Positions 18,852 through 58,198 of a stretch of DNA of 64,000 nt are shown here, one piece after another (position 1 is the first letter of the stretch; each line of letters starts with the position of its first letter). The translations under genes were made by a program, and so were the position numbers. This stretch comes from Haliotis rubra (lineage: Eukaryota), in NCBI RefSeq assembly GCF_003918875.1, contig NW_025766536.1, positions 744,001 to 808,000 on the forward strand, given 5' to 3'. Below the pieces are notes generated by a model. It was not told the DNA's origin and searched no databases. It saw only the letters and a program-made list of their open reading frames with translations.

Positions 18852-20160
18852 CTAATAGACAGCAGGTTGTAGACGCCCAGGCAGGTCTATCTTCTCGCCA
18901 AATCTCGGGAAGCCATATCGTTCGAGAACGATATTACCGTCGGACAACTCTCGCGGTGTCAGGGGGGAAACGTGTTCCTGTTGACTTCCGGCTGATTGAC
19001 GAGCCTCGTTGTGAGTCGACTTCAAATGCAGCCAAAGCTTTCGAGACATGTTTCTCTGGTATGTTTAATTTCTGGAACAAGGCTCTAACCATTCCTTCCT
19101 TCTCCTTAACAAGCTCTTCGTACTTAACGGCAAATATCGGGATCCCACTCTTCCTAAACTCCGTGTATCTCGCCATGAGGGCTGACGTCATTATCATCGT
19201 GTGTCCTACCATACACAATTTTACCGCCATATCCTCAAGGTCATGGTCATAGCGATCCACCCGTGAAAATATTTTGTACAGACTCTGTCGAAGTCCTGGA
19301 AAGAACCTCGCGAGTAAATCAGAATCTATCATCACCTTTGCTAACTTTGTGAGAAATTCCGACTGAGTTAACCCCTTGGCAGAGACGGCGTATGGCAAAC
19401 TATCTCTGTATAGAAACAGGTGCTTGATTTCAGGAAACATCTCACATATGACCTTGACCTCTGCGAATGTGAATGAAGCGACCTTCATAATAATTCTTTG
19501 AGCTCCTGGCAGCGTCTTACACTGCAGCCTGATGACACTCTGCAGCAGCTTGAGAACTTCCTCTTCCGGGCAGGTTTCAAGTTTACTTAACGTTGTGACA
19601 GATATTAGGGCCTCTGGTTCTCCGAGGGTTATTGTTCCGGGGACCTTCTCAAACACCTGGCTGAGAAGAGTAGAGCCACAGCGTCCAGTGCTAGAGAGCC
19701 ATATGACAGGGACCTGAGGGTCTCCCGTCTCGTCCGCCAGACGGTGGAAGGCTTCCACAGGAATGGTGTATACCTTCTCAGCATTGACAGTCTGGGCCCA
19801 CTTCATGAAAGGATGGGTGTCAGAGCTGTAGATGTCTACATTTTTGTCCGTCTTTAAAAATATAGCCTCTGTTGAAGTGATATTATACAGAGATACTGAT
19901 GGGTCCAAGAGGATTCGAGGATGGTCAAACCTTTCGTGTGTAGTCCAGAATTCATTTGTATTTGAAGGCGTCGCATGAGACACTTTCCTTTTCCAAAGCA
20001 CGTGTTGCACATGGACGGAACGTTCATAGCACGTGCTGGTAGCTGCACGTGCAGACTGTACCCCAGTAAGTCTCCAAATAAGGCCGTGGAGAACTTTGTA
20101 TATTGGTGTCAGAATCAGGAATATGATGGAAGCGAGGCTGGACGACATGTCAGAGAACAT
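18852..20160 (-). CDS. Sulfotransferase-like protein, copy 1 (apparent +1 frameshift in a G-run near the C-terminus)
   Basis: 5'-PSB loop WLSSTGRCGSTLL, 3'-PB motif LFLYRD, and AVKYEELV. ATG at 20160 follows an acceptor AG at 20172-20171. Six G at 18962-18967 versus five in the other copies. The conserved tail ...PGRLQPAVY* ends at 18852. Confidence 0.8.
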
Positions 20161-21127
20161 CTTCTGGTTTCTGGGGAGGAAAAAAATATGTGAAGTTTTA
20201 CATTCAGTCTGTACACTAAAAGGCAAAGTTTATATGGAACCCAAACACCCGTCTCTCTTATAATACATACTACAAAAAAGCAGAATTATTGCACGAGTCA
20301 TTTTAAAGTATTTGTTTAATTACAGGTGACTGATTGATTGATTGTTTGTTGTCTAACGCCTCACTCATCAATATTCCAGACAATCCAGTGATCAACAGCA
20401 TGAGCATCTCTCTACGCAAATGAGATACGAGAGCACGTTTCAACCAAGTCACCGAGCCTGACCACTCCATCCCGTTGGTCGCCTTTTATGACAAACATGG
20501 GTTGCTGAAGACCAGTTCTAACCCGGATCTTCACGGGCCACAGTTGAATGAGCAAGTGCTGACGCCAAGTTTGACATATATCAGTATCACGGCGTGCCAG
20601 CTTAGCGGAGGTGCAGTTCTGCTCGACAGACTGCAAGTTTCTTGTGCCAGGTACTTGAAGCGTTCGCTTGTCACGGCGACGACTCGGGTTTAATTCCCAT
20701 ATGGATACAATGTGTGAAGCCCATTTCTATTGTCCCCCCGCCGTGATGTTGTGAAAAGCTAAGAGCTGCATTAATCACTCACTGTATTCTCCTTGAATTA
20801 TGCAGCTCGGAGTGTATGTTTTTCCTTTTTTTTAAACATTATCCCTATTGATGTATTGATGATTTCAAATGTGGAATACAAACTATATAGTATTGCCTGT
20901 TTAAAAATATAGACTGATAATATGGTAATATGAAAGAAGTTAATTATGCGGTTAACCCACAGGTAATAAGTACGTTACCACACTCTTTGACCTCTGTAAA
21001 TGCTCATTATCTATAGAAATAGATCAGAAATAAATTGTAGTGCTTCAGTGTTTTTTTAATTCACCCTCAGAAGATCAATAAATGCAGAAAAAGCGCAAAG
21101 GTGAGGGAAGTAGTCAGCACAATATGT

Positions 21128-21400: not shown

Positions 21401-21571
21401 AATACCTCACTCGAACGTGAACAGAAAAAAATGTAAAAGTTATCATTCGAACCCCCTTCTGCCCAGCCCCTCCTGTGGGAACAAAAGCTCAGAGTGAAGT
21501 CCCTCTTCTCTCGGAGCTCCATTTCAAGTTAAAAAGTTATTTGTTTCTCTCAAATTATGTATTTTCAGACG

Positions 21572-22060: not shown

Positions 22061-22138
22061 AGTTATATAACCGCTATTTCGAGCCCTTTTCCGACTAGTC
22101 GACTCAAAGTTTACTCGAATACATGACAGGTTTTTGTT

Positions 22139-22801: not shown

Positions 22802-22943
22802 TTTAATGTCTAGAGCTGAGGCAATCGAGTCTTGCCCAACCAATCCTAAAGGAAATCACAGTTAACATCACCGAAACAGTGGACATCAAATTTAAATGTC
22901 TTCCGGCAGTGACCTATTGTCCACCGGTGATGCGTGAGTGAGT

Positions 22944-24285
22944 GATGACAACGACTACTACATCGTCATAGTGAAACACCGGGGATGACAACGAGTACTA
23001 CATCGTTATAGTGACCCACCGGGGATGACAACGACTACTACATCGTTATAGTGACCCACCGGGGATGACAACGACTACTACATCGTCTTAGTGAACCATC
23101 GGGGATGACAACGACTACTACATCGTCATAGTGAACAACAGGGGATGACAACGACTACTACATCGTCATAGTGAACAACAGAGGATGACAACGACTACTA
23201 CATCGTCATAGTGAACAACAGGGGATGACAACGACTACTACATCGTCATAGTGAACAACAGGGATGACAACGACTACTACATTGTCATAGTGAACCATCG
23301 GGGATGACAACGAGTACTACATCGTTATAGTGACCCACTGGGGATGACAACGACTACTACATCGTCATAGTGAAACACCGGGGATGATAACAACTACTAC
23401 ATTGTCATAGTGGACCACGAATGTTGACAACGACTACTACATTGTCATAGTGAACAACAGGGGATGACAGCTACTACTACATGGTCATAGTGAACAACAA
23501 GGGATGACAACGACTACTACATGGTCATAGTGAACAACAGGGGATGACAACGACTACTACATGGCCATAGTGAAACACCGGGGATGACTACGACTACTAC
23601 ATGACATAGTGAACAAAGGGATGACAACGGCTACTACATCGTCATAGTGAACCACGAATGTTGACAACGACTACTACATCGTCATAGTGGACCACCGGGG
23701 ATGACAACGACTACTACATCGTCATAGTGAACTACCGGGGATGACAGCTACTACTACATCGTCATAGTGAACAACGAATGATGACAACGACTACTACATG
23801 GTCATAGTGAACTACCGGGGATGACAACGACTACTACATCGTCATAGTGAACCACTACAACGACTACTACATGGTGATGACAACGACTACTACTACATCG
23901 TCATAGTGAACTACCGGGGATGACAACGACTACTACATGGTCATAGTGAACCACCGGGGATGACAACGACTACTACATGGTCATAGTGAACTACCGGGGA
24001 TGACAACGACTACTACATGGGGATGACAACGACTACTACATCGTCATAGTGAACAACCGGGGATGACAACGACTACTACATACATCGTCATACTGACAAC
24101 GACTACTACATCGTCATAGTGAACAACAGGGGATGACAACGACTACTACATCGTCATAGTGAACCACCGGGGATGACAACGACTACTACATGGTCATAGT
24201 GAACCACGGGGGATGACAACGACTACTACATTGTCATAGTGAACCACCGGGGATGACAACGACTACTACATCGTCATAGTGAACC
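22944..24285. repeat. 40-bp satellite array A (~33 units)
   Basis: ggatgacaacgactactacatcgtcatagtgaacNNNNgg in tandem. Confidence 0.97.
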
Positions 24286-25894: not shown

Positions 25895-27202
25895 CTAATA
25901 GACAGCAGGTTGTAGACGCCCAGGCAGGTCTATCTTCTCGCCAAATCTCGGGAAGCCATATCGTTCGAGAACGATATTACCGTCGGACAACTCTCGCGGT
26001 GTCAGGGGGAAACGTGTTCCTGTTGACTTCCGGCTGATTGACGAGCCTCGTTGTGAGTCGACTTCAAATGCAGCCAGAGCTTTCGAGACATGTTTCTCTG
26101 GTATGTCTAATTTCTGGAACAAGGCTCTAACCATTCCTTCTTTTTCCTTCACAAGCTCTTCGTACTGAACGGCAAATATCGGGATCCCACTCTCTCGAAA
26201 CTCCGTGTATCTCGCCATGAGGGCTGACGTCATTATCATCGAGTGTCCTATCATACACAATTTTACCGCCATATCCTCAAGGTCATGGTCATAGCGATCC
26301 ACCCGCATAAACATCTTATACAGACTCTGTCGAAGTCCTGGAAAGAACCTCGCGAGTAAATCAGAATCTATCATCACCTTTGCTAACTTTGTGAGAAATT
26401 CCGACTGAGTAAACCCCTTGGCAGAGACGGCGTATGGCAAACTATCTCTGTATAGAAACAGGTGCTTGATTTCAGGAAACATCTCACATATGACCTTGAC
26501 CTCTGCGAATGTGAATGAAGCGACCTTCATAATAATTCTTTGAGCTCCTGGCAGCGTCTTACACTGCAGTCTGATGACACTCTGCAGCAGCTTGAGAACT
26601 TCCTCTTCCGGGGAGGTTTCAAGTTTACTTAACGTTGTGACAGATATTAGGGCCTCTGGTTCCCCGAGGGTTATTGTTCCGGGGACCTTCTCAAACACCT
26701 GGCTGAGAAGAGTAGAGCCACAGCGTCCAGTGCTAGAGAGCCATATGACAGGGACCTGAGGGTCTCCCGTCTCGTCCGCCAGACGATGGAAGGCTTCCAC
26801 AGGAATGGTGTACAATTTCTCAGCATTGGCAGCCTGGGCCCACTTCATGAAAGGATGTGTGTCAGAGCTGTAGATGTCTACATCTTTGTCCGTCTTTAAA
26901 AATATAGCCTCTGTGGAAGTGATATTATACAGAGATACTGATGGGTCCAAGAGGATTCGAGGATGGTCAAATCTTTCGTGTGTAGTCCAGAATTCATTTG
27001 TATTTGAAGGCGTCGCATGAGACACTTTCCTTTTCCAAAGCACGTGTTGCACGTGGACGGCACGTTCATAGCACGTGCTGGTAGCTGCACGTGCAGACTG
27101 TACCCCAGTAATTCTCCAAATAAGGCCCTGGAGAACTTTGTATATTGGTGTCAGAATCAGGAATATAATGGAAGCGAGGCTGGATGACAGGTCAGAGAAC
27201 AT
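25895..27202 (-). CDS. Sulfotransferase-like protein, copy 2 (435 aa)
   Basis: Intact ORF from MFSDLSS; motifs STGRCGSTLL, LFLYRD, AVQYEELV; hydrophobic N-terminal segment. Confidence 0.85.
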   Translation of the reverse strand: MFSDLSSSLASIIFLILTPIYKVLQGLIWRITGVQSARAATSTCYERAVHVQHVLWKRKVSHATPSNTNEFWTTHERFDHPRILLDPSVSLYNITSTEAIFLKTDKDVDIYSSDTHPFMKWAQAANAEKLYTIPVEAFHRLADETGDPQVPVIWLSSTGRCGSTLLSQVFEKVPGTITLGEPEALISVTTLSKLETSPEEEVLKLLQSVIRLQCKTLPGAQRIIMKVASFTFAEVKVICEMFPEIKHLFLYRDSLPYAVSAKGFTQSEFLTKLAKVMIDSDLLARFFPGLRQSLYKMFMRVDRYDHDLEDMAVKLCMIGHSMIMTSALMARYTEFRESGIPIFAVQYEELVKEKEGMVRALFQKLDIPEKHVSKALAAFEVDSQRGSSISRKSTGTRFPLTPRELSDGNIVLERYGFPRFGEKIDLPGRLQPAVY

Positions 27203-27384: not shown

Positions 27385-29851
27385 TACATACTATAAAAAG
27401 CAGAATTATTGCATGAGTCGTTTTTTAAGTATTTGTTTAATTACAGGTGAATGATTGATTGATTAATTGATTGTTGTCTAACGCCTCACTCATCAATATT
27501 CCAGACAATCCAGTGATCAACAGCATGAGCATCTCTCTACGCAATTGAGATAGGAGAGCACGTTTCAACCAAGTCAGCGAGCCTGACCACTTGATCCCGT
27601 TGGTCGCCTTTTATGACAAATATGGGTTGCTGAAGACCAGTTCTAACCCGGATCTTCACGGGTCACAGGTGAATGAGCAAGTGCTGACGCCAAGTTTAAC
27701 AGATTTCAGTATCACGGGGTGGATTTCTGCTCGACAGACTGCAAGTTTCTTGTGCCAGGTGCTTGAAGCGTTCGCTTGTCACGGCGACGACTCGAGTTTA
27801 ATTCCCATATGGATACAATGTGTGAAGCCCATTTCTATTGTCCCCCGCCGTGATGTTGTGAAAAGCTAAGAGCTACATTAATCACTCACTGTATTCTCCT
27901 TGAATTATGCAGCTGAGAGTGTGTGTGTTTCCTTTTTTGAAAACATTATCCCTATTGATGTATTGATGATTTCAAATGTGGAATACAAACTATATAGTAT
28001 TGCCTGTTTGAAAATATAGACTGAAACTATGAAGTTCATTATGCGGTTAACCCACAGGTAATAAGTACGTTACCACACTCTTTGACCTCTGAAAATGCTC
28101 ATTATCTATAGAAATAGATCAGAAATAAATTGTAGTGCTTCAGTGCTTTTTAATTCACCCTCAGAAGATCAATAAATGCAGAAAAAGCGCCAGGGTGAGG
28201 GAAGTAGTAAGCACAATATGAATACCTCACTCGAACATGGACAGAAAAGGTTTTAAAACTTATCATTCGAACTCCCTTCTGCCCAGCCCCTCCTGTGGGA
28301 ACAAAAGCTCAGAGTGAAGTCTACACCTTCCTCGGATTCTAAATCCCTCGTCTCTCGGAGCTCCATTTCAAGTTAAAAGATTCTGAAATCCACCGCGCGT
28401 GGGCGTCTAAGGCACCAGGCTCGGATCCAGCCCATTTCAGCCCACCTGTGACCGGGTGTAAAAACCTTGGAGTTATTTGTTTCTCTCAAATTATGTATTT
28501 TCAGACACCGCGCGTGGGCGAGCTGGCTAAGGCACCAGGCTTGTGATCCAGCGAGGTTGAGGTGTCGGGATCGAATCCCACCCATGTGACCGTTATTTGT
28601 AAAAACCTGTATTTTCAGACACCGCGCGTGTGTGCAGACTCTTTCAGTGTTGTCACAACCCCTAGTGTACAGTTGGAGTCAACTTTGTGTGCAGACTCTT
28701 TCAGTGTTGTCAAACCCCTAGAACCCACGAATCCGGTGGTATATGACCAGATGGTGGCCACATGAATACCGGTACGTGCAAACACCTAGTTGTGGGTACA
28801 GCAACGTGCAGTAAACTTGGACAAAGTACTGTGACTATGTGTCCCAGTCCACCCAGCTGTGAATGGGTACCTCGTTAGGATGAGAAAGCCACAACTCAGT
28901 GCGCCTACTTCCCAGGGAGTTGAGATTGATAATACGATGTGCCGTTGAGATTGACATCTAATGTAAAAAAAGTACCAGCGCCTTGAGCATGCACTAGTTG
29001 CCGGGATATGTGCGCTTTATAAATATCCTATATTAAAATTAATTATATAACCGCCTTTGCAATGGTGCTATTTCGGGCCCTCGTCCGACTGCTCGACTAA
29101 AAGTTTACTCGAATACAGGGTTACTCGAATACATGACACGTTTTTGTTTACTCTGATACAAGCTGCAGCTTCCAGATGAATATACAGTGATCCAAGTTAC
29201 TGTTCTTGTATTGCAGGGAAGCCAGGAGATCAGAGATCACAGGCTCAGATGTGTCCCAGCATAGAGCGACTATTCATGCCTGTCCTGGGCTCTGTCACAA
29301 TAACCTTGTGCACAGTACACGCCCAGTCACCCGTATCCCACCTCTGTCATGACGGCTTGTCAATAACTGACTATTGGAGAAAGAGGTAAATCGACCTCGT
29401 TGGTAGTATTCCCAACGTATACAGTCGCGGAATAAAAAACAGGTGTTGCACGTATGTTTTCACAACAGCCTGCTCTCATGTAAACTGAAATTTAGTCTCA
29501 GAAATAAAGTTATCTTTAAAATATTTTCAAAGCAAATCCAAACGGCATCCAGAACTATACGATGGGTATTGTTTTACGCCGCATATTCCAGCAGAATTCC
29601 AGCAATATTTACGGCAGGAGTTTCTCATATTGTACCCATGTGGGGAATAGAACCCCGGTCTTTGGCGTAACGAGCGAACGCCTTAACCACTAGGCTACCC
29701 CACCGCTCCTTTAATGTCTAGAGCTGAGGCAATCGAGTCTTGCCGAACCAATCCTAAAGGAAATCACAGTTAAAATCACCGAAACAGTGGACATCAAATT
29801 TAAATGTCTTCCGGCAGTGACCTATTGTCCACCGGTGATGAGTGAGTGAGT

Positions 29852-32800
29852 GATGACAACGACTACTACATCGTCATAGTGAAACACCGGGGATGACAAC
29901 GACTACTACATCGTCATAGTGAACCATGGGGAATGACAACGTCTACTACATCGTCATAGTGAACTACCGGGGATGACAACGACTACTACATCGTCACAGT
30001 GAACCATCGGGGATGACAACGACTACTACATCGTCATAGTGAACCACAGGGGATGACAACGACTACTACATTGTCATAGTGAACAACAGGGGATGACAAC
30101 GACTACTACATGCTCATAGTGAACTACCGGGGATGACAACGACTACTACATCGTCAAAGTGAACCATCGGGGATGACAACGACTACTACATCGTCATAGT
30201 GAACCATCGGGGATGACAACGACTACTACATCGTCATAGTGAACCACTGGGAATGACAACGACTACTACATCGTCATAGTGAACAACAGGGGATGACAAC
30301 GACTACTACATCGTCATAGTGAACTACCGGGGATGACAACGACTACTACATCGTCATAGTGGACCACGAATGTTTACAACGACTACTACATCGTCATACT
30401 GAACCACAGGGGATGACAAAGACTATTTCATCGTCATAGTGAACAACAGGGGATGACAACGACTACTACATGGCCATAGTGAACTACCGGGGATGACAAC
30501 GACTACTACATCGTCATAGTGAACAACAGGGGATGACAACGACTACTACATCGTCATAGTGAACCACAGGGGAAGACAACGACTACCACATGGTCATAGT
30601 GAACCACTGGGGATGACAACGACTACTACATCGTCATAGTGAACTACCGGGGATGACAACGACTACTACATCGTCATAGTGGACCACGAATGTTTACAAC
30701 GACTACTACATCGTCATACTGAACCACAGGGGATGACAAAGACTACTTCATCGTCATAGTGAACAACAGGGGATGACAACGACTACTACATCGTTATAGT
30801 GAACCATGGGGAATAACAACGACTACTACATTATCATAGTGAACCACAGGGGATTACAACGACTACTACATGGTCATAGTGAACCACAGGGGATGACAAC
30901 GACTACTACATCGTCATAGTGAACTACCGGGGATGACAACGACTACTACATGCTCATAGTGAACTACCGGGGATGACAACGACTACTACATCGTCAAACT
31001 GAACCATCGGGGATGACAACGACTACTACATGGTCATAGTGAACAACAGGGGATGACAACGACTACTACATGCTCATAGTGAACTACCGGGGATGACAAC
31101 GACTACTACATCGTCAAAGTGAACCATCGGGGATGACAACGACTACTACATCGTCATAGTGAACTACCGGGAATGACAACGACTACTACATGGTCATAGT
31201 GAACTACCGGGGATGACAACGACTACTACATCGTCAAAGTGAACCATCGGGGATGACAACGACTACTACATCGTCATAGTGAACTACCGGGGATGGCAAC
31301 GACTGCTACATGGTCATAGTGAACTACCGAGGATGACAACGTCTACTACATCGTCATAGTGAACCACAGGGGATGACAACGACTACTACATTGTAATAGT
31401 GAACCACCGGGAATGACAACGACTACTACATCCTCATAGTGAACCACTGGGGATGACAACGACTACTACATCGTCATAGTGAACTACCGGGGATGACAAC
31501 GACTACTACATGGTCATAGTGAAACACCGGGGATGACAACGACTACTACATCGTCATAGTGAACCACAGGGGATGACAACGACTACTACATCGTCATAGT
31601 GAACAACAGGGGATGACAACGACTACTACATCGTCATAGTGAACTACCGGGGATGACAACGACTACTACATCGTCATAGTGACCCAACGGAATGACAACG
31701 ACTACTACATGGTCATAGTGAACAACAGGGGACGACAACGACTACTACATCGTCATAGTGAACCACCGGGGATGACAACGACTACTACATGGCCATAGTG
31801 AACTACCGGGGATGACAACGACTACTACATCGTCATACTGAACCACAGGGGATGACAACGACTACTACATCGTCATAGTGAACCACCGGGGATGACAACG
31901 ACTACTACATCGTCATAGTGAACTATCGGTGATGACAACGACTACTACATGGCCATAGTGAAACACCGGGGATGACAACGACTACTCCATGGTCATAGTG
32001 AACCACGAATGTTGACAACGACTACTACATGGTCATAGTGAACCACCGGGAATGAGAACGACTACTACAACGTCATAGTGAACTACCGGGGATGACAACG
32101 ACTACTACATCGTTATAGTGAACTACCGAGGATGACAACGACTACTACATGGCCATAGTGAAACACCGGGGATGACAACGACTACTACATGGTCATAGTG
32201 AAACACGAATGTTGACAACGACTACTACATGGTCATAGTGAACCACAGGGGATGACAACGACTACTACATGGTCATAGTGAACCACCGGGGATGACAACG
32301 ACTACTACAACGTCATAGTGAACTACCGGGAATGACAACGACTACTACATCGTCATAGTGAAACACCGGGGATGACAACGACTACTACATCGTCATAGTG
32401 AACCACGAATGTTGACAACGACTACTACATGGTCATAGTGAACCACGAATGTTGACAACGACTACTACATCGTCATAGTGAACCACAGGGGATGGCAACG
32501 ACTACTACATGGTCATAGTGAACTACCGAGGATGACAACGACTACTACATCGTCATAGTGAACAACAGGGGATGACAACGACTACTACATCGTCATAGTG
32601 AACTACTGGGGATGACAACGACTACTACATCGTCATAGTGAACTACCGGGGATGACAACGACTACTACATGGCCATAGTGAAACACCGGGGATGACAACG
32701 ACTACTACATCGTCATAGTGAACCACGAATGTTGACAACGACTACTACATCGTCATTGTGAACCACAGGGGATGACAACGACTACTACATCGTCATAGTG

Positions 32801-36329: not shown

Positions 36330-37637
36330 CTAATAGACAGCAGGTTGTAGACGCCCAGGTAAGTCTATCTTCTCGCCAAATCTCGGGAAGCCATATCGTT
36401 CGAGAACGATATTACCGTCGGACAACTCTCGCGGTGTCAGGGGGAAACGTGTTCCTGTAGACTTCCGGCTGATTGACGAGCCTCGTTGTGAGTCGACTTC
36501 AAATGCAGCCAAAGCTTTCAAGACATGTTTCTCTGGTACGTTTAATTTCTGGAACAAGGCTCTAACCATTCCTTCCTTCTCCTTAACAAGCTCTTCGTAC
36601 TGAACGGCAAATATCGGGATCCCACTCTTCCTAAACTCTGTGTATCTCGTCATGAGGGCTGACGTCATTATCATCGTGTGTCCTATCATACACAATTTTA
36701 CCGCCATATCCTCAAGGTCATGGTCATAGCGATCCACCCGTGAAAACATCTTGTACAGACTCTGTCGAAGTCCTGGAAAGAACCTCGCGAGTAAATCAGA
36801 ATCTATCACCACCTTTGCTAACTTTGTGAGAAATTCCGACTGAGTTAACCCCTTGGCAGAGACAGCGTATGGCAAACTATCTCTGTATAGAAACAGGTGC
36901 TTGATTTCAGGAAACATCTCACATATGACCTTGACCTCTGCGAATGTGAATGAAGCGACCTTCATAATAATTCTTTGAGCTCCTGGCAGCGTCTTACACT
37001 GCAGTCTGATGACACTCTGCAGCAGCTTGAGAACTTCCTCTTCCGGGCAGGTTTCAAGTTTACTTAACGTTGTGACAGATATTAGAGCCTCTGGTTCTCC
37101 GATGGCTATTGTTCCGGGGACCTTCTCAAATACCTGGCTGAGAAGAGTAGAGCCACAGCGTCCAGTGCTAGAGAGCCATATGACAGGGACCTGAGGGTCT
37201 CCCGTCTCGTCCGCCAGCCGATGGAAGGCTTCCACAGGAATGGTGTATACCTTCTCAGCATTGACAGCCTGGGCCCACTTCATGAAAGGATGGGTGTCAG
37301 AGCTGTAGATGTCTACATCTTTGTCCGTCTTTAAAAATATAGCTTCTGTGGAAGTGATATTATACAGAGATACTGATGGGTCCAAGAGGATTCGAGGATG
37401 GTCAAATCTTTCGTGTGTAGTCCAGAATTCATTTGTATTTGAAGACGTCGCATGAGACACTTTCCTTTTCCAAAGCACGTGTTGCACGTGGACGGCACGT
37501 CCATAGCACGTGCTGGTAGCTGCACATGCAGACTGTACCCCAGTAATTCTCCAAATAAGGCCGTGGAGAACTTTGTATATTGGTGTCAGAATCAGGAATA
37601 TGATGGAAACCAGACTGGACGACAGGTCAGAGAACAT
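36330..37637 (-). CDS. Sulfotransferase-like protein, copy 3 (435 aa)
   Basis: Intact ORF with the same motifs; acceptor AG at 37649-37648. Confidence 0.85.
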   Translation of the reverse strand: MFSDLSSSLVSIIFLILTPIYKVLHGLIWRITGVQSACAATSTCYGRAVHVQHVLWKRKVSHATSSNTNEFWTTHERFDHPRILLDPSVSLYNITSTEAIFLKTDKDVDIYSSDTHPFMKWAQAVNAEKVYTIPVEAFHRLADETGDPQVPVIWLSSTGRCGSTLLSQVFEKVPGTIAIGEPEALISVTTLSKLETCPEEEVLKLLQSVIRLQCKTLPGAQRIIMKVASFTFAEVKVICEMFPEIKHLFLYRDSLPYAVSAKGLTQSEFLTKLAKVVIDSDLLARFFPGLRQSLYKMFSRVDRYDHDLEDMAVKLCMIGHTMIMTSALMTRYTEFRKSGIPIFAVQYEELVKEKEGMVRALFQKLNVPEKHVLKALAAFEVDSQRGSSISRKSTGTRFPLTPRELSDGNIVLERYGFPRFGEKIDLPGRLQPAVY

Positions 37638-41790: not shown

Positions 41791-42455
41791 TGATCATGGT
41801 TGCTCGATGTCCGCACATGACTTCTGTCATATCAACATATCCGAATTTGTAAACTTTATTGTATAAATTATCTAAACAAGCGGTTAACCTGGACAAAGTC
41901 CACACAGTGGCGTACTCGCTGAAAACCAATAAGCAGGTCCATTTGCATGTGAGAAAACTTGAAAAAATAAATCCCATGAAGTGCAAAGATTACCTATTTA
42001 TTTCGCAATATGTTATTTTGGGATTACAAAACTAAAATATTTTCAAGTGAAGTTGTATATATTTTTGCAATATCATTGTCTGGCAACTCTCGAAGTCAGC
42101 TTGGAAATGTACGTTACCACACTCTCTGACCTCTGAAAATGTTCATTATCTATAGAAATAGATCAGAAATAAATTGTAGTGGTTCAGTGGTTTTAATTCA
42201 CTCACAGAAAATCAATAAATGCAGAAAAAGCGCAAGGATCAGGGCAGTAGTCGGCACAATATGAATACCTCACTCGAACTTGGACAGACATTTTTTTAAA
42301 ACTGATCATTCAAACGCCAAGGTTTAAAAACGAAAAAGTCTCAATACTTAAACACTTTTCGTGACCATCCGAGTATGGTGTTTGTTCCTATTTCGGATCA
42401 AATTAGACACTGTGGTAAAACAATGTCTCATATAAATTAATAGTGTAAGTCATAA

Positions 42456-48422: not shown

Positions 48423-48596
48423 TGACTGACTGACTGACTGAGTTTGGTTTTACGCCGCTTTTAGCAATATTCCAGCAACATCACGGCTGGGGACACCAGA
48501 AATGGGCTTCACACATTGTCCCCATGTGGGGATTCGAACCCGGGTCTTCGGCGTGACGAGCCAACGCTTTAACCACTAGGCTACCCCACCGCCCCG
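48423..48596 (-). mobile_element. SINE family A
   Basis: Full length; TSD gctatagaatga. Confidence 0.92.
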
Positions 48597-49177
48597 CTAT
48601 AGAATGAAATGACGAAGATGAAATATCCATAAAACCAGATATATCATGAGATCTCATACATCTAGTTTTCATATGTAATTAAGTACACAGCTGCATGCGA
48701 TGAGCTTTGACAGAGAAGCGTATTACCGTTTTCCGTTCTATAAACGACCGTCCATTTTATATACTATACTAACGAACATAGTATACTATGTCAAATTCCT
48801 ATGTTATTTCGAAAATTCATTTTTCACTCAAACATGTTAGTAAATTTTACAAAACAGTTAGTAAATATTTGAAGTATTATAGTTTTTCACTGTATCGTAT
48901 GGTGGCTGATCGGGGCATCGCTATATCGTACATCATAGTATCGCCATGTCTCGTGTTGTCATAGTGCAGTGTTGTGTCGTACTAACTCGTTGTCTCAGAA
49001 TCGCCTGGAAATTTCAGGGATATATGTGGATGGCCCGAATAGGTATCCATAAATATTCGAAGTAACAAGAAAATAATCCAAACAACGGGACGAAATATTG
49101 TTTTCGTTTATGGTACAAGCGTACAAACCGGTGTACACACTGCGTAAGTCCACTTTGCAACTCGAAACAACTACTAT

Positions 49178-49339
49178 GAGTGAGTATGGTTTTACGCCGC
49201 TTTTAGCAATATTACAGCAATATCATGGCGGGGCACACCAGAAACGGTCTTCACACATTGTACCCATGTGGGGAATCGAACCCGGGTCTTCAGCCTGACG
49301 AACGAACGCTTTGACCACAAGGCTACCCCACCGGCCCCG
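49178..49339 (-). mobile_element. SINE family A
   Basis: Reverse-complement copy. Confidence 0.87.
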
Positions 49340-49614
49340 AAGAAACTGGAATTATGGAAATTAATAATGACAAAGTAATCGAAGTAATGAGAAATTAATT
49401 GATATTACAAGAAAATGCTCGAAGCAACGAGAAAATAATTAAAGCATCGAGATGGAATATTGCTAAAAGCAGGGAAAACCAAACTCACTCACTCACTCAT
49501 AACAAAAGTAGTATTAATGACTTTCATTAACTTTAGACCTGTCGCACTTTCAAACTGTATTGAAGTAAAGTAAGTGTTGAAGTGTTTAGCGTGGAGGACC
49601 TGCATTACTTCGAC

Positions 49615-51001: not shown

Positions 51002-52309
51002 ATGTTCTCTGACCTGTCGTCCAGCCTCGTTTCCATCATATTCCTGATTCTGACACCAATATACAAAGTTCTCCAGGGCCTTATTTGGAGTATTACTGGG
51101 GTACAGTCTGCACGTGCAGCTACCAGCACGTGCTATGAACGTGCGGTCCACGTACAACATGTGGTTTGGAAAAGAAAAACGTCTCACGTAACGGCTTCAA
51201 ATACAAATGAATTTTGGACTACACACGAAAGGTTTGACCATCCTCGAATCCTCTTGGACCCATCAGTATCTCTGTATAATATCACTTCCACAGAGGCGAT
51301 ATTTATTAGGACAGCCATTGATGTAGATATCTACAGCTCAGACTCACATCCTTTCATGAAGTGGGCCCAGGCTGTCAATGCTGAGAAGGTATACACCATT
51401 CCTGTGGAAGCCTTCCATCGGCTGGCGGACGAGACGGGAGACCCTCAGGTCCCTGTCATATGGCTCTCTAACACTGGACGCTGTGGCTCTACTCTTCTCA
51501 GCCAGGTGTTTGAGAAGGTCCCCGGAACAATAGCCATCGGAGAACCAGAGGCCGTAACATCTGTCACAATGTTAAGTAAACTTGAAACCTGCCCGGAAGA
51601 GGAAGTTCTCAAGCTTCTGCAGAGTGTCATCAGGCTGCAGTGTAAGACGCTGCCAGGAGCTCAAAGAATTATTCTAAAGGTCGCTGCCTTCACTTTTGCA
51701 GAGGTCAAGGTCATATGTGAGATGTTTCCTGAAATCAAGCACCTGTTTCTATACAGAGACAGTTTGCCATATGCAGTGTCTTCCAAGGCACTTGCAATGT
51801 CTGAATTAAGAATTAAAATCTTCAAAGGATTTGCCGATTCTGATTTTCTCGCGAAGATCTTTCCTGGAACCCGAAGGCATATGTACAAGATGATTTCACG
51901 CATAGATCGTTATGATCGTGACCTTGACGACATTGCTGCAGACATGACCTTCATAGGACACTGGATGATACTGTGTGCGGGTGTCATGACGAGATACAAG
52001 GAGTTCAGAGAGAGTGGGATCCCGATATTTGCCGTTCAGTACGAAGAGCTTGTGAAGGAAAAAGAAGGAATGGTTAGAGCCTTGTTCCAGAAACTAGACA
52101 TACCAGAGAAACATGTTTCGAAAGCTCTGGCTGCATTTGAAGTAGACTCACAACGAGGCTCGTCGATCAGCCGGAAGTCAACAGGAACACGTTTCCCCCT
52201 GACACCGCGAGAGTTGTCCGACGGTAATATCGTTCTCCAACGATATGGCTTCCCGAGATTTGGCAAGAAAATAGACCTACCTGGGCGTCTACAACCTGCT
52301 GTCTATTAA
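51002..52309 (+). CDS. Sulfotransferase-like protein, copy 4 (435 aa; inverted, divergent central block)
   Basis: Intact ORF; motifs WLSNTGRCGSTLL, LFLYRD, AVQYEELV; acceptor tcttccccag ends at 50991. Confidence 0.87.
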   Translation: MFSDLSSSLVSIIFLILTPIYKVLQGLIWSITGVQSARAATSTCYERAVHVQHVVWKRKTSHVTASNTNEFWTTHERFDHPRILLDPSVSLYNITSTEAIFIRTAIDVDIYSSDSHPFMKWAQAVNAEKVYTIPVEAFHRLADETGDPQVPVIWLSNTGRCGSTLLSQVFEKVPGTIAIGEPEAVTSVTMLSKLETCPEEEVLKLLQSVIRLQCKTLPGAQRIILKVAAFTFAEVKVICEMFPEIKHLFLYRDSLPYAVSSKALAMSELRIKIFKGFADSDFLAKIFPGTRRHMYKMISRIDRYDRDLDDIAADMTFIGHWMILCAGVMTRYKEFRESGIPIFAVQYEELVKEKEGMVRALFQKLDIPEKHVSKALAAFEVDSQRGSSISRKSTGTRFPLTPRELSDGNIVLQRYGFPRFGKKIDLPGRLQPAVY

Positions 52310-53034: not shown

Positions 53035-53196
53035 GTGAGTGAGTTTAGTTTTACGCCGCTTTTAGCAATATTACAGCAATATCACGGCGGGGGACACCAG
53101 AAATGGGCTTCACACATTGTACCCATGTGGGGAATCGAACCCGGGTTTTCGGCGTGACGAGCCAACGCTTTAACCACTAGGCTACCCCACCGCCAC
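53035..53196 (-). mobile_element. SINE family A
   Basis: Full-length reverse copy. Confidence 0.9.
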
Positions 53197-53460
53197 GAAC
53201 AACAATTTGAACCCTGATCATAGGCTACAGACATGTCAAAGGGAGACAACTATGTACGTAAATGCTTGAAGTCCATCCCCGGTGTCCTCTGCCGTGATAT
53301 TGCTGGACAGTTGATAATAGCAACGTCAAACCATATTGTCAAACTATAGTTCATGGAATTGATTTTTAGCGCACACGAATTGAACATTTGTGATTTCCTG
53401 ATAAATCATCGACACACAGACAAGAACGAGATAAATCTACTAGTTTATTGATGGGGCAGT

Positions 53461-56400
53461 TTATATAACAACAGTTTCTAAATCAGTTCTACCATCATCA
53501 CTGTCTCCACCTCCTATTTCACACCGTTGTTGTCCATCCATTCCATTCCATTATCCATTCCTTGATCCATCCGTCCATTCCATCATTTCCACCTCCCATT
53601 CCATTCCATTCCATTCCATTCCATCCATCCTTCCATCCATTTCTCTCCATCCATCCACCTTCCTGTCCATCCACCTCCATTGTCCTTCCTTCCTTCCTCC
53701 TTGTCCTTCACTCCATCCACCTCCTTCCCTCCACCATCCATTTCTTCCATCCATCCACCTCCTTCCATCCATCTTCCATTCCTTCCATCCATTGTCCATC
53801 CACCTCCATTATCCATTCCTTCCATTCCATTCCATCCATCCTCTGTTATCCTTCCTTTCCTTCATCCATCCATCTTCCTCTTTCCATTCCATTCCACCTC
53901 CATCCATCCTTCCACCATTCCATTCCCATCCATCCATCCATCCATCCTCCATTCCATATTCCATTCCTTTCTCCATCCTCCATCCTCCATCATTCCTCCA
54001 TCCGTCCATCCATTCCACTCCACCACCATCCTCCATTCCTTCCATCCATCCATGTCCATCCATCCCTCCATTTCCATTACTCCTTCCCTCCATCATCCTC
54101 CATTATCTCCTTCTCCATCCATCCCTCCCATCCTCCATCCTTCCATTATCCTTCCATCCATCCTCCACTTTCCATTTCCATCCACCATGTCCATCCTCCA
54201 TTCCATTGTCACTTTCCTCCATGTCCATCCCATCCACTCCATCTTCCATCCTGTCCATTCCATCCGCCATCCACCACCATCCACCATTCCACTCCACTTT
54301 CCGTTATCCATCCACCTCCATTCCATTCATCCTTCCACTTCCTTCCGTTGTCCATCATCCACCCCTCCACATTCTCCATCCTTCCCTCCATCTTCCTGTC
54401 TTGTCCATCCATCCCTCCACCTCCATTCCTCTCTCCTTCCTCCCTTGTCCATCCATCCATCCTCCTGTCCATGTGTCCACCTCCTCTTCCCTTCCACCAC
54501 CTCCACTCCACCTTCCATTCCATCCATCATTCCATCCATTCCTCCTTCCATCCCTCCATGTCCATCCCACTTCCTTCATCCATCCATTCCCTCCTTCCAT
54601 CCGTCACCTCCTCCACTTCCATCCATCCATTCCTCCACTCCTCCACTTCCATCGTCCATCCATCCTCCTTCCGTCCACTTCCATCCATTGTCCATCCATC
54701 CACTGTCCATCCTCCTCCTTTCCATTCCTTCCATTCCCTCCATGTCCATCCACCTTCCATTCTGTTTCCTCCTTTCCATCCTCCCTCCTTCCATTTCCAT
54801 CCACTCCATCCACTGTCCTCCATTGTCTTCCTCCATCATCCATCCTCCACTCCATTTTGTCCATCCTCCTGTCCATCCACTTCCTTTGTCCTTCCACTCC
54901 ATCCATGGTCCCATCCCTCCACTTCCGTTGTCCATCCATCCATCCTTCCGTCCATCCATTCCACTTCCTCCATCCCTCCATGTCCATCCGTCCTCCACTT
55001 CCATTTCCATCCACCCTCCATTCCACCTCCACTTTCCATTTGTCCTGGTGTCCTTCCTCCATTCCTCCACCTTCCGTTATCCATCCTCCTCCTCCATCCA
55101 CCACCACCTTCCTCCGTTGTCCGTCCTCCTCCATTGTCCCTCCTTCCATTGTCCGTTGTCCTCCACTCCTTGTCCTGTCCATCCACCATCCGTCCACTCC
55201 CTTTCCATTGTCCTTCCTCCATCCCCTGTCCTCCTTCCGTTGTCCTCCGTCCACCTCCTTTCCGTTGTCCATCCATCCACTCCGTTGTCCATCGTCCGTC
55301 CTTCCATTGTCCTTCCCTCCGTTGTCCGTTGTCCTTCCTGTTCCGTTATCCATCCTCTCCATGTCCATCCATCCGTCCTCCACCTCCCTCCACTTCCTCC
55401 ATCCACCTCCTTCCGTCCTCCATTCCATCCTCCGTCCACTTTGTCCTTGTCCACTCCCTCCTCCACTTTCCGTTGTCCGTTGTCCTCGGGGTCCTTCCTC
55501 CATGTTCCTGTCCGCCTCCATCGTCCTCCGTTGTCCATCCACCGTCCATTTCCATCCTTTCTGTTGTCCTTCCACCTCCATCCACCACCATCCTTCCTTT
55601 CCGTTGTCCATCCCTCCTTGTCGTCCCACTTTCCGTCCACCTTTTCCGTTATCCGTCCACTCCATCCTCCACTGTCCATCCATCTTCCATCCTCCATCCT
55701 CCACTTCCGTTATCCTCCTCCATTTCCATTCCGTGGTCTCGTCATCCACCTCCTTCCATCCACCATCCATCTCCTCCAGTCCATCCTCCTTTCCATCCAC
55801 CTTCCACCATGTCCATCCACCTCCACTCCTTTCCGTTGTCCACCTCCACCTCCTCCATCCACTCTCCACTTCCATTCTCCACCACCACCTCCTCCATATC
55901 ATCCTCCACCTCCATTTCCTTGTCCATCCACCACCTCCTCCATCCAGTCCTTCCCCACCTCCTCCACCTCCCTTTCCGACACTGTCCATCCCACCCACCT
56001 CCTCCATAGTAGTCATCGTCTCCACCTCCTCCACTTCCCTTTCTGTTGTCAGCATCACCACCACCTCCTCCATAGTCCATCCCTGTCTCCACCTCCTCCC
56101 ACTTCCCTTTCCATGTCTGCATCATCTCCACCACCTCCTCCATAGTAGTCATCGTCACCACCTCCTCCACTTCCCTTTCCATTGTCAGCATCACCACCAC
56201 ACCTCCTCCATAGTAGTCATCGTCTCCACCTCCTCCACTTCCCTTTCCATTGTCCAGCATCACCACCACCTCCTCCATAGTAGTCATCGTCTCCACCTCC
56301 TCCACTTCCACTGCCCTTTCTGTTGTCAGCATCACCACCACCTCCTCCATAGTTCTCATCGTCACCACCTCCTCCACTCCACTTCCTCCATCCTCCACTA

Positions 56401-58198
56401 TTGTGTCGGCATCACTCACCACCCTCCTCCATAGTAGTCATACCCTTTCTGTTGTCCGTCACCACCTCCTCCACTTCCTGTACCGTTGTCGGCATCACCA
56501 CCACCTCCCTCCATAGTAGTCATCGTCTCCACCTCCTCCACTTCCTTTCCTGTTGTCAGCATCACCACCCTCCTCCTCCATAGTAGTCCATCGTCTCCAC
56601 CTCCTCCACTTCCCTTTCCTGTTGTCAGCATCACCACCACCTCCTCCCCTCCATAGTAGTCATCCACCCACCTCCTCCACTTCCACTTTCCGTCAGCATC
56701 ACCACCACCCTCCTCCATCCACTTCATTTCCTCCATCCACCTCCTCCACTTCCCATTTCCGTCCACCCTCCACTCCTTCCGTCATCACCACCACCACCTC
56801 CATATAGTCCATCGTCCTCCACCTCCTCCACTTCCCTTTCATTGTCAGCATCACCACCACCTCCTCCATAGTAGTCATCGTCTCCACCTCCTCCACTTCC
56901 TTTCCGTTGTTCTGCATCACCACCACCTCCCTCCTCCATAGTAGTCATCGTCACCACCTCCTCCACTTCCCTTTCCTTGTCGGCATCACATCACCTCCAC
57001 CTCCTCCATAGTAGTCATCGTCACCACCTCCCACTTCCCTCCATCCTTCCCTTTCCATTGTCATCATCACCCACCACCTCCTCCATAGTAGTCATCACCA
57101 CCACCTCCTCCTCCACTTCCCTTTTCCGTTTTCATCGTCATCATCACCACCTCCTCCATAGTAGTCATCGTCACCACCTCCTCCACTTCCCTTTCCGTTG
57201 TCATCAGCATCACCACCACCTCCTCCATAGTAGTCATCACCTCCCTCCTCCACCTCCTCCACCTTCCCTTTCTGTTGTCAGCATCACCACCACCTCCTCC
57301 ATAGTAGTCATCGTCACCACCTCCTCCACTTCCCTTTCCGTTGTCAGCATCACCACCACCTCCTCCATAGTAGTCATCGTCTCCACCTCCTCCACTCCCT
57401 TTCCGTTGTCGGCATCACCACCACCTCCTCCATAGTAGTCATCGTCACCACCTCCTCCACTTCCTTTACCGTTGTCAGCATCACCACCACCTCCTCCATA
57501 GTAGTCATCGTCTCCACCTCCTCCACTTCCCTTTCCGTTGTCAGCATCACCACCACCTCCTCCATAGTAGTCATCGTCACCACCTCCTCCACTTCCCTTT
57601 CCATAGTAGTCATCGTCACCACCTCCTCCACTTCCTTCACCGTTGTCTGCATCACCACCACCTCCTCCGTAGTAGTCATCGTCTCCACCTCCTCCACTTC
57701 CCTTTCCGTTGTCAGCATCACCACCACCTCCTCCATAGTAGTCATCGTCACCACCTCCTCCACTTCCCTTTCCGTTGTCAGCATCACCACCACCTCCTCC
57801 ATAGTAGTCATCGTCACCACCTCCTCCACTTCCCTTTCCGTTGTCAGCATCACCACCACCTCCTCCATAGTAGTCATCGTCTCCACCTCCTCCACTTCCC
57901 TTTCCGTTGTCAGCATCACCACCACCTCCTCCGTAGTAGTAGTCATCACCTCCACCTCCTCCACTTCCCTTTCTGTTGTCTGCATCACCTCCACCTCCTC
58001 CATAGTAGTCATCGTCACCACCTCCTCCACTTCCCTTTCCGTTGTCTGCATCACCACCACCTCCTCCATAGTAGTCATAGTCTCCACCTCCTCCACTTCC
58101 CTTTCCGTTGTCAGCATCACCACCACCTCCTCCGTAGTAGTCATCGTCTCCACCTGTTTTATTCTCCTTCTTGTCCTTGGGGGGTGTCTCTTGCTCCT
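53461..58198 (-). CDS. Probable large terminal exon of an acidic Gly/Asp/Tyr-rich repeat protein (22-aa unit DDDYYGGGGGDADNGKGSGGGG); 3' two-thirds frameshifted or scrambled
   Basis: Minus-strand acceptor ...ctaaatttgacatttacag|AG at 58199/58198 leads into unique EEQETPPKDKKENKT, then about 12 clean 66-bp units with largely synonymous variation. At the other end, unique GGGDSDDGRTDLETVVI-TAA (stop 53463-53461) is followed by AATAAA at 53449-53444. Confidence 0.62.

What the first reader, a model, noticed from the sequence alone, without database searches (positions are those of the whole stretch)
18852..58198. Candidate enzyme-plus-substrate cluster: four sulfotransferase-like paralogues beside a protein made of repeated DDDYY and G-S-G motifs
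Seen: four ~435-aa genes with PAPS-binding motifs and a hydrophobic N-terminal segment. The fourth ends ~1.15 kb from the predicted stop of a convergent gene encoding tandem DDDYYGGGGGDADNGKGSGGGG units. Established: Tyr preceded by acidic residues in Gly-rich, Cys-free context is the classic tyrosine O-sulfation site. Ser-Gly near acidic residues is the glycosaminoglycan attachment motif. The motif order here (GRCGSTLL...GEPE...IMK...LYRD...YEELV) parallels TPST-type enzymes (PRSGTTL...GEE...NK...VRD...YEQLV), though other sulfotransferases share it. Bacteria have linked sulfotransferase/peptide pairs (Xanthomonas RaxST-RaxX). Inference: these may be dedicated, non-canonical sulfotransferases that heavily sulfate the neighbouring secreted protein or its glycans, giving a polyanionic matrix for shell, mucus or egg coat. 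That would be a biosynthetic-cluster-like arrangement unusual in animals. Adjacency could also be chance.
Basis: partly seen in the sequence, partly recalled or inferred. Interest (0 to 1): 0.85.

Follow-up and report, generated by a model that had tools for sequence, protein, structure and literature searches.

The report
Abalone sulfotransferase family beside acidic repeat gene
Four copies of an uncharacterised, tyrosine-sulfotransferase-like enzyme gene in an abalone genome really do sit next to the remains of a Gly/Asp/Tyr-repeat protein gene, but nothing tested shows that the enzymes act on that protein, and in this assembly the repeat gene is broken.

Summary
The window comes from a Haliotis genome. 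It holds four intronless paralogues of a roughly 435-aa PF13469 sulfotransferase. Three are intact and one is frameshifted near codon 400. Each has an N-terminal membrane anchor, complete PAPS-binding motifs and dN/dS of 0.13-0.4. TPST1/2 are the nominally best sequence-profile and fold matches in the PDB, but they are statistically tied with heparan-sulfate and other sulfotransferases. A true TPST orthologue lies on another contig.

The DDDYY/GSG repeat is real, unique in the genome and convergent to copy 4, with its stop 1,151 bp away. It is orthologous to exon 2 of an annotated 2,034-aa secreted protein of H. asinina.

In this assembly only 266 codons stay in frame. About 24 frame switches follow, the 3' 2.4 kb is degenerate, and the signal-peptide exon is not found in the assembly. 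Short-read contigs from the source sample contradict the first frame break, so at least that break is an assembly error.

The adjacency is shared with H. asinina. It is absent within 10 kb in H. rufescens, H. cracherodii, Owenia and Lineus. No RNA evidence could be obtained, and the complex prediction gave no answer.

The enzyme-substrate reading stays an untested hypothesis, at about 10%. Other first-stage notes on this window had already flagged the repeat (s1-344940) and the divergent block of copy 4 (s1-345013).

The parts
18855..20160 (-). Sulfotransferase copy 1 (type A). The frame is lost near codon 400 and the last 38 codons lie in another frame at 18855-18968.
   Evidence: annotated product 408 aa
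25895..27202 (-). Sulfotransferase copy 2 (type A), intact, 435 aa, single exon
36330..37637 (-). Sulfotransferase copy 3 (type A), intact, 435 aa, single exon
51002..52309 (+). Sulfotransferase copy 4 (type B), intact, 435 aa. It has a membrane helix at 2-32, a beta-rich N-domain at 49-134 and the sulfotransferase core at 146-430. The divergent block at aa 258-335 corresponds to about 51773-52006.
57399..58199 (-). In-frame part of the G/D/Y repeat exon. A candidate splice acceptor (tttacag) lies just upstream at 58200-58206. A short unique leader is followed by about 12 units of 22 codons.
55930..57398 (-). G/D/Y units that need about 23 further frame switches. The break at 57396 is contradicted by short-read contigs of the source sample.
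53461..55929 (-). Degenerate TCCA-rich (G/W/M/D/E-reading) 3' part of the array. It ends in a short G/D-frame tail and a TAA orthologous in position to the H. asinina stop.
53198..53438 (-). 3' flank orthologous to the sequence just downstream of the H. asinina stop codon (72% identity)
58388..58484 (+). tRNA-derived SINE, in the same relative position and orientation as the SINE in the H. asinina intron (L003:19418-19516). It marks the orthologous intron remnant.

Best explanation
The window holds a lineage-expanded tandem family of intronless, type II membrane-anchored, PAPS-dependent sulfotransferases. The membrane anchor suggests a Golgi location. The enzymes belong to an uncharacterised, widely distributed branch of Pfam PF13469 that is distantly related to TPST.

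The genes are functional, as shown by purifying selection. They come in two old variants, A (copies 1-3) and B (copy 4). The variants differ sharply only in residues 258-335 and are homogenised elsewhere. I infer that this block is the acceptor-binding insert, so the two variants probably take two related but distinct acceptors. The acceptor may be protein tyrosine, glycan or a small molecule and cannot be read from sequence.

The neighbouring array is the orthologue of exon 2 of a fast-evolving secreted protein annotated in H. asinina. That protein has a signal peptide, a PAN-like Cys domain and about 1,830 residues of G/D/Y repeats. In this assembly the array is a torso: its first exon was not found and it has many frame breaks, of which at least one is an assembly error. 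Either the gene is decaying in this species or it is badly assembled.

The enzyme-repeat adjacency is synteny inherited within one Haliotis clade. No functional coupling has been shown.
For: Enzymes.
- Four copies lie in the window and one 35%-identical paralogue lies elsewhere.
- PF13469 scores over its cut-off.
- G159, R160, C161, G162, T164, P182 and K226 are invariant, and E181, Y251, R252 and S260 nearly invariant, across animal and bacterial homologues.
- The AF2 model has pLDDT 91.7.
- Every top fold hit is a sulfotransferase: TPST1 Z 14.1, NDST1 13.0, SULT1B1 12.7.
- dN/dS against H. asinina, H. rufescens and H. cracherodii orthologues and between paralogues is 0.13-0.4.
- Similar roughly 430-aa PF13469 clusters occur in nematodes, amphioxus, diatoms and bacteria.
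- The Owenia and Lineus homologues are also single-exon.

Two variants.
- The block is 50-54% identical between A and B, against 91-93% for the rest within the species.
- Block identity to the matching type in H. asinina is 77-79%.

Repeat.
- It is unique in the genome.
- Its flank, repeats, acceptor and stop are orthologous to the H. asinina gene.
- H. asinina exon 2 is an uninterrupted 1,832-codon frame with 43% Gly, 14% Asp and 13% Tyr.
- Codon position 2 varies least among its units: 0.29 against 1.1 and 1.39.
- Exon 1 carries a signal peptide and a canonical GTGAGT donor.

Synteny.
- The order A ... B, then a convergent repeat gene, is the same in both species.
Against: - No expression evidence exists for either gene class.
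- That the acceptor-binding insert is at residues 258-335 is inferred from the general sulfotransferase fold, not shown.
- The H. asinina gene is a computational model. A second frame of its array is equally open (1,850 codons), and its synonymous/non-synonymous counts are only slightly worse (36/73 against 39/63).
- Whether the breaks in the window are real cannot be settled. One of about 24 was checked and it was an assembly error.
- The Tyr context is striking enough that a substrate role cannot be excluded.
Confidence: 0.6

Rival explanations
1. The clustered sulfotransferases, especially type B next to the repeat gene, are dedicated enzymes that sulfate the Tyr residues or Ser-linked glycans of the neighbouring secreted G/D/Y protein. 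The product would be a polyanionic matrix.
For: - TPST1 is the best PDB hit by profile (E 1e-5), with R/E/K/3'-PB positions aligned. It is also nominally first by fold.
- Topology is type II.
- In the window, 20 of 26 Tyr fit the strict acidic, Cys-free consensus. Across both species 269 of 270 Tyr have an acidic residue within two positions.
- The H. asinina orthologue has a signal peptide.
- A type B enzyme is the immediate convergent neighbour of the repeat gene in both species.
Against: - The fold ranking is tied with carbohydrate and small-molecule sulfotransferases.
- Identity to TPST is 14-16%, and phmmer gives E 0.37.
- A canonical TPST is present elsewhere and could do the job.
- H. 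rufescens and H. cracherodii carry the enzyme with no repeat gene within 10 kb. A relative in the same 90% enzyme cluster does have the exon-1 orthologue.
- Owenia and Lineus homologues have unrelated neighbours.
- In this genome the candidate substrate lacks a signal-peptide exon and an intact frame, while the enzymes remain under purifying selection.
- In H. asinina only 21 of 244 Tyr meet the strict consensus.
Confidence: 0.1
2. The G/D/Y array is an ordinary non-coding minisatellite in both species. The H. asinina 2,034-aa model would then be an annotation artefact that joins a real PAN-like exon to an open frame created by composition.
For: - The window has several other large tandem arrays: 8949-9815, 22940-24285, 29850-35096 and 39521-41801.
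- Several frames, on both strands, are open over the arrays in both species.
- The array in the window is full of indels and grades into a TCCA-like microsatellite.
- The putative RNA runs show nothing on it.
- A protein search with the repeat found nothing.
Against: - Periods are multiples of three in both species (66, 84 and 24 bp), and 5.5 kb runs without a frame-breaking indel in H. asinina.
- Different repeat types in the H. asinina N-terminal 230 residues keep the same D/E/Y/G character in one frame.
- Codon position 2 is the least variable.
- The splice acceptor, the stop position and the exon-1 donor are conserved.
- An exon-1 orthologue is conserved in a third species.
Confidence: 0.15
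3. The repeat gene is intact and expressed in this animal as well. All the breaks and the missing first exon would then be faults of a long-read hybrid assembly in a tandem repeat.
For: - The only break that the short-read contigs resolved (57396) is an assembly deletion.
- Breaks occur about once per 95 bp in the repeat, while three neighbouring 1.3-kb enzyme ORFs are clean.
- A contig of a sister species joins the 3' flank to G/D/Y units after about 63 bases, as in H. asinina, rather than to a TCCA tract (table 8, record 31).
Against: - No other indel rows were reported for the source sample between 55.9 and 57.4 kb, though coverage there is partial.
- Short-read contigs do lie on much of the TCCA tract at 90% or better (table 2).
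- The exon-1 orthologue was not found in any of the 2,855 contigs with two different queries, nor within 16 kb upstream. There are no N gaps in the window.
Confidence: 0.25

Closest known systems
Protein-tyrosine sulfotransferases TPST1/TPST2 (human; PDB 5wri, 3ap1-3)
   Same: Both have a type II membrane anchor and a PAPS-binding P-loop fold. The motif order Arg-loop, Glu 21 residues later, Lys, RD..S and YE.LV aligns in a profile comparison. TPST is the best PDB match by profile (E 1e-5) and nominally by fold (Z 14.1, Foldseek E 3.7e-6).
   Different: Identity is only 14-16%. The abalone proteins have an extra roughly 90-residue beta-rich domain before the core, which is shared with their bacterial homologues. 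They are not the orthologue, because a true TPST (E 6e-106 to TPST2) lies on contig C1946. The acceptor is unknown.
Mycobacterial Stf1/Stf9 and other bacterial PF13469 sulfotransferases
   Same: They have about the same length, roughly 370-390 aa once the membrane anchor of the abalone proteins is set aside. The structural alignments to Stf1 and Stf9 start at model residues 33 and 99, within or before the N-terminal domain. Stf1 is the second-best profile hit (E 6.6e-4). Bacterial homologues at 21-25% identity align end to end.
   Different: The bacterial enzymes are soluble and act on glycolipids or are uncharacterised. The abalone genes carry an N-terminal membrane helix.
Xanthomonas RaxST-RaxX (linked sulfotransferase and sulfated peptide)
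   Same: The idea is the same: a PF13469-type enzyme gene next to the gene of a Tyr-bearing secreted substrate.
   Different: RaxST-RaxX coupling is shown genetically and biochemically (my knowledge of the literature, not tested here). Here the adjacency is shared by only two congeners, is absent in four other genomes, and has no functional evidence.
Gly/Tyr- or Asp-rich low-complexity molluscan secreted proteins (shematrin-, prisilkin- or aspein-like shell matrix proteins)
   Same: The composition is similar: 43% Gly, 13% Tyr, 14% Asp. The protein also has a signal peptide in H. asinina, rapid repeat turnover and a single giant repeat exon.
   Different: No sequence match was found. The motif is absent from the searchable literature, and nothing matching it turned up in term searches of the H. 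asinina and H. laevigata shell proteome papers. The tissue of expression is unknown.

Membership tests
PAPS-dependent sulfotransferase, Pfam PF13469 (Sulfotransfer_3) | Profile HMM score above the curated cut-off | tested here: met
   37.5 and 40.9 bits against a cut-off of 27
PAPS-dependent sulfotransferase, Pfam PF13469 (Sulfotransfer_3) | 5'-phosphosulfate-binding loop and 3'-phosphate-binding motif | tested here: met
   GRCGST is invariant, and YR(D/N)x7S nearly invariant, in 26 homologues
PAPS-dependent sulfotransferase, Pfam PF13469 (Sulfotransfer_3) | Sulfotransferase P-loop fold | tested here: met
   The model has pLDDT 91.7. In the VIA search the top 22 rows are all sulfotransferases (Z 9.7-14.1). 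In Foldseek all 35 matches with E up to 0.001 are sulfotransferases or the sulfotransferase-fold retinol dehydratase
Protein-tyrosine sulfotransferase (TPST) | Orthology-level sequence similarity to TPST1/2 | tested here: not met
   phmmer E 0.37, 14-16% identity. The genome's real TPST is on C1946 (E 6e-106)
Protein-tyrosine sulfotransferase (TPST) | Catalytic Arg, Glu and Lys positions (as I recall them for TPST2: R78, E99, K158) plus the 3'-PB Ser | tested here: met
   The profile alignment puts R160, E181, K226 and R252/S260 on the GRSG, GEE, NK and RD..S positions of TPST1. The equivalent of the C-terminal catalytic Ser was not resolved
Protein-tyrosine sulfotransferase (TPST) | Fold closer to TPST than to other sulfotransferase classes | tested here: inconclusive
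   TPST1 scores Z 14.1 against NDST1 13.0, SULT1B1 12.7 and 3-OST5 12.5. Rows within 1 Z unit count as tied
Protein-tyrosine sulfotransferase (TPST) | Transfers sulfate to peptidyl tyrosine | not testable with these tools
   Needs an enzyme assay. The complex prediction gave no answer
Linked enzyme-substrate gene pair (RaxST-RaxX type) | Adjacency conserved wherever the enzyme occurs | tested here: not met
   Present in H. asinina. Absent within 10 kb in H. rufescens, H. cracherodii, Owenia and Lineus
Linked enzyme-substrate gene pair (RaxST-RaxX type) | Neighbour is a secreted protein with sulfatable sites | tested here: inconclusive
   The H. asinina orthologue has a signal peptide. Tyr contexts fit the consensus in 20 of 26 cases here but 21 of 244 there. 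In this genome no signal-peptide exon and no intact frame were found
Linked enzyme-substrate gene pair (RaxST-RaxX type) | Co-expression | not testable with these tools
   No run on record as RNA holds either stretch. Two runs guessed to be RNA, from a relative, show no contig on the array

The most novel reading that the evidence does not exclude
A TPST-related but non-orthologous family of membrane-anchored sulfotransferases has been recruited in one abalone clade. In this reading the type B variant is a dedicated modifier of the adjacent giant G/D/Y-repeat secreted protein and puts hundreds of sulfo-tyrosines, or sulfated O-glycans, on it. That would be an animal example of a physically linked enzyme-substrate pair making a polyanionic extracellular material.
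Probability: 0.1. Interest if true: 0.75.

Novelty: new member of a known kind. Interest (0 to 1): 0.35.

Why it matters
If the enzymes were shown to act on the neighbouring protein, this would be a rare animal case of a linked modifier-substrate gene pair. It would also give a route to a heavily sulfated structural material.

As it stands, the finding has three more modest uses.
- It flags a widespread, conserved and completely uncharacterised branch of TPST-like sulfotransferases, found in molluscs, annelids, nemerteans and apparently nematodes, amphioxus and diatoms. The two maintained pocket variants in abalone make a convenient entry point for acceptor discovery.
- It gives a concrete, Tyr-rich acidic candidate substrate to test.
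- It shows that tandem-repeat genes in this assembly carry indel errors that can hide or fake ORFs.

Tried and rejected
- Complex prediction of the enzyme lumenal part (residues 45-435) with a 44-residue repeat peptide gave no answer (score 0.02). This is not evidence either way.
- A protein search with H. asinina exon 2 returned nothing, probably because of the low complexity.
- A literature search for the repeat motifs found 0 papers. Term searches of the H. asinina and H. laevigata shell-proteome papers turned up neither a matching Gly/Asp/Tyr protein nor a sulfotransferase.
- The search for RNA runs found no run on record as RNA. Two small runs guessed to be RNA, from a relative, gave only SINE matches in the laid stretch. 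Their share of the enzyme stretch may also be SINE-derived.
- Exact-protein look-ups of window copies 3 and 4 in public assemblies found nothing on record.
- Searches for the exon-1 orthologue by protein (two queries) and by DNA, in the window, 10 kb beyond it and the whole genome, found only 26-35% paralogues and SINEs.
- I considered and rejected horizontal transfer of the enzyme family into Spiralia. The feature search suggests related eukaryotic clusters in several phyla.
- I considered and rejected a dispersed satellite. The G/D/Y repeat occurs at this one locus only.
Full report
**What is in the sequence**

The window has four paralogous single-exon ORFs: 18934-20160(-), 25895-27202(-), 36330-37637(-) and 51002-52309(+). 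Three encode 435 residues. Copy 1 loses its frame near codon 400, and its last 38 codons lie in another frame at 18855-18968. It is on record as a 408-aa product.

The window is C1646:744001-808000 of a 1.378-Gb, 2,855-contig genome. The closest homologues are 'uncharacterized proteins' of Haliotis asinina, H. cracherodii and H. rufescens. From memory the assembly size fits H. rubra, but I did not test this. A whole-genome search finds only these four copies plus one 35%-identical paralogue on C913.

**The enzymes**

- Pfam PF13469 (Sulfotransfer_3) is matched above its cut-off, at 37.5-40.9 bits against 27.
- In an alignment of 26 animal and bacterial homologues, the invariant or nearly invariant columns are the 5'-phosphosulfate loop GRCGST, E181-P182, K226, Y251-R252...S260 and a C-terminal DSQ motif.
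- An AlphaFold model built on this alignment is confident (pLDDT 91.7). It shows an N-terminal helix (2-32), a beta-rich domain (49-134) and the sulfotransferase core (146-430).
- The helix is hydrophobic, with a Kyte-Doolittle 19-residue maximum of 1.93. This fits a type II signal anchor. That inference was not tested with a dedicated predictor.
- dN/dS against orthologues and between paralogues is 0.13-0.4, so these are working genes.

**How TPST-like are they?**

A single-sequence search of the PDB gives TPST1 at only E 0.37. The family profile gives TPST1 at E 1e-5, Mycobacterium Stf1 at 6.6e-4 and TPST2 at 1e-3. The printed alignment places R160, E181, K226 and R252/S260 on the corresponding TPST1 motif residues.

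By fold, TPST1 is first in Foldseek (E 3.7e-6, TM 0.57 on the target), and heparan-sulfate 3-O-sulfotransferase follows at 3.2e-5. In the Foldseek-independent search TPST1 scores Z 14.1, tick TPST 13.8, TPST2 13.4, NDST1 13.0 and SULT1B1 12.7.

The genome also has a genuine TPST on C1946, with 192 bits to PF13469 and E 6e-106 to human TPST2. The window genes are therefore a separate, TPST-related branch and not TPSTs. Their acceptor cannot be read from these data.

A language-model feature search points to similar roughly 430-aa PF13469 clusters in nematodes, amphioxus, diatoms and bacteria. That result is a lead only. The Owenia and Lineus homologues are likewise single-exon.

**Two variants**

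Copies 1-3 (type A) and copy 4 (type B) are 91-93% identical outside residues 258-335 but only 50-54% identical inside that block. Each block is 77-79% identical to a matching H. asinina type.

The rest of the gene is more similar within a species than between orthologues, which points to gene conversion. The block has stayed distinct since before the species split. I infer that this is the acceptor-side insert and that the two types have different acceptors.

**The repeat**

Tandem Repeats Finder reports a 66-bp unit with 93% matches and 1% indels at 57600-58155. Identity falls to 73-85% with 10-14% indels down to 55.9 kb. Below that lies a TCCA-rich tract with 63% matches, reaching 53.5 kb.

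On the minus strand the clean part reads as a short unique leader followed by about 12 copies of GGDDDYYGGGGGDADNGKGSGG. A frame-tracking pass needs 48 frame switches between 58199 and 53461, about 24 of them within the recognisable G/D/Y part, and several stops remain. Long ORFs on both strands here follow from the composition.

The repeat is not a dispersed satellite. A six-frame search of the genome finds it only at this locus.

**Orthology with a gene model**

In H. asinina three tandem type-B-like enzyme genes are followed, 2.2 kb downstream and convergently, by an annotated 2,034-aa gene.

- Its exon 1 encodes a signal peptide and a Cys-containing PAN-like domain (Pfam PAN_4, E 0.0024, below threshold) and ends at a GTGAGT donor.
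- Its exon 2 is one uninterrupted 1,832-codon frame with 43% Gly, 14% Asp and 13% Tyr.
- The array is built on 84- and 24-bp periods with 1% indels in the main 84-bp array.

The window aligns to the 3' flank of this gene (53198-53438, 72%), to its repeats (55844-58154, 66-68%) and to a SINE in its intron. The acceptor context (t(t)ttacag followed by a(a)ggagc) and the stop position also correspond. The whole-locus order is the same in both species: type A, then type B on the opposite strand, then the convergent repeat gene.

**Is the repeat coding?**

Evidence in favour:
- Periods are multiples of three in both species.
- There is no frame-breaking indel over 5.5 kb in H. asinina.
- Several different repeat types in the N-terminal 230 residues keep one D/E/Y/G-rich frame.
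- Codon position 2 varies least among units: 0.29 against 1.1 and 1.39.
- Exon 1 has a 60%-identical orthologue in a third abalone data set.

Evidence against:
- A second frame is equally open.
- The synonymous/non-synonymous contrast between frames is weak (39/63 against 36/73).
- I found no transcript or peptide evidence.

**State of the gene in this genome**

The exon-1 orthologue was not found in the window, in the next 10 kb, or in any contig. The best matches are 26-35% paralogues on C2611, C2190 and C2838. The window has no N gaps. SINEs and a Tc1/mariner remnant lie directly upstream of the array.

Short-read contigs from the source sample insert one base after 57396 in both contigs that cover it. 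This is exactly the first frame break. A 593-base contig of a sister species joins the 3' flank to G/D/Y units after about 63 bases (table 8), as in H. asinina.

Part of the damage is therefore assembly error.

**The enzyme-substrate hypothesis**

Points in favour:
- The enzymes are TPST-like, and their membrane anchor would place them in the lumen.
- The H. asinina neighbour is predicted to be secreted.
- Nearly every Tyr in both species (269 of 270) has an acidic residue within two positions, none has more than one basic residue within five, and none has a Cys within seven.
- 20 of 26 Tyr in the window also have at least three acidic residues within five positions, though only 21 of 244 do in H. 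asinina.
- Type B is the immediate neighbour of the repeat gene in both species.

Points against:
- H. rufescens and H. cracherodii have a single enzyme gene. By its 3' flank it is positionally orthologous to window copy 1 (L024:15978-21307 aligns to window 14452-9799). Neither species has a G/D/Y sequence or an exon 1 within 10 kb on either side.
- A run whose enzyme copy falls in the same 90% cluster as those two species does carry the exon-1 orthologue. The repeat gene may therefore exist unlinked in that clade, but I could not show this directly.
- The Owenia and Lineus enzymes have unrelated neighbours (Ski2-type helicase and legumain, or none called) and only AT-rich non-coding repeats nearby.
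- A canonical TPST is available elsewhere in the genome.
- In this genome the enzymes are conserved while the candidate substrate looks damaged.

No RNA evidence could be obtained. The complex prediction gave no answer. I put the coupling at about 10%.

**Verdict**

The enzyme family and the repeat are real, and the repeat is orthologous to a plausible secreted-protein gene. The 'cluster' is best read as inherited synteny within one abalone clade.

The family is a new, uncharacterised member group of a known enzyme kind. The enzyme-substrate idea is a reasonable experiment, not a finding.

Noticed in passing
window 51773-52006 (aa 258-335 of copy 4) against copies 1-3: There are two enzyme types. 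The block is 50-54% identical between types, while the rest is 91-93% identical within the species. Each type has a counterpart in H. asinina at 77-79% block identity. This suggests gene conversion outside the block and maintained acceptor-site variants.
   Followed up: yes
window 18855-18968 / 18934-20160: Copy 1 has a frameshift near codon 400. It could be a real pseudogenising change or an assembly indel like the one at 57396.
   Followed up: partly
window 22940-24285 and 29850-35096; also 39521-41801 and 8949-9815: Large tandem arrays lie between the enzyme copies. Self-alignment offsets suggest periods of about 40 bp, about 23 bp and about 44 bp. The 30-34 kb region is strongly A-rich on the plus strand (AT skew about 0.28).
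   Followed up: no
window 53035-53194, 58340-58484, 59072-59222, 60232-60388, 48431-48600, 49177-49340: Copies of a tRNA-derived SINE present at enormous copy number in the genome. Summed contig depth over it in the laid reads is above 10^7. The same element sits in the H. asinina intron.
   Followed up: partly
window 58750-58990 (-): The C-terminal remnant of a Tc1/mariner-type transposase lies between SINEs, directly upstream of the repeat array. I recognised it by eye from the translation and did not test it.
   Followed up: no
window 62233-62841 (+): A 202-aa ORF with a weak zf-RVT match (E 0.036), probably a retroelement remnant.
   Followed up: no
G000:C1946:340016-340846 (L023:117-947): The genome's canonical TPST orthologue. 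One 277-aa open frame covers most of the catalytic domain (E 6e-106 to human TPST2). At least 17 other PF13469-like hits lie on other contigs.
   Followed up: partly
G000:C2611:1815763-1850959 (L004-L006) and C2190:1858946-1859398 (L007): Three tandem paralogues and one dispersed paralogue of the signal-peptide plus PAN/MANEC-like exon that heads the H. asinina repeat gene (26-35% identity). These may be a small family of secreted proteins with this N-terminal module.
   Followed up: no
Read-laying table 8, record 31 (run X4, sister species), on window 53170-53533 and 57716-57889: A 593-base contig runs from the 3' flank into G/D/Y-type units after about 63 bases. The TCCA-rich 2.4 kb of the window may therefore be species-specific or misassembled.
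   Followed up: no
L002:2376-6629 (H. cracherodii): A Polinton/Maverick-type DNA polymerase B gene and a BIR-domain gene lie just upstream of the single enzyme gene in H. cracherodii.
   Followed up: no
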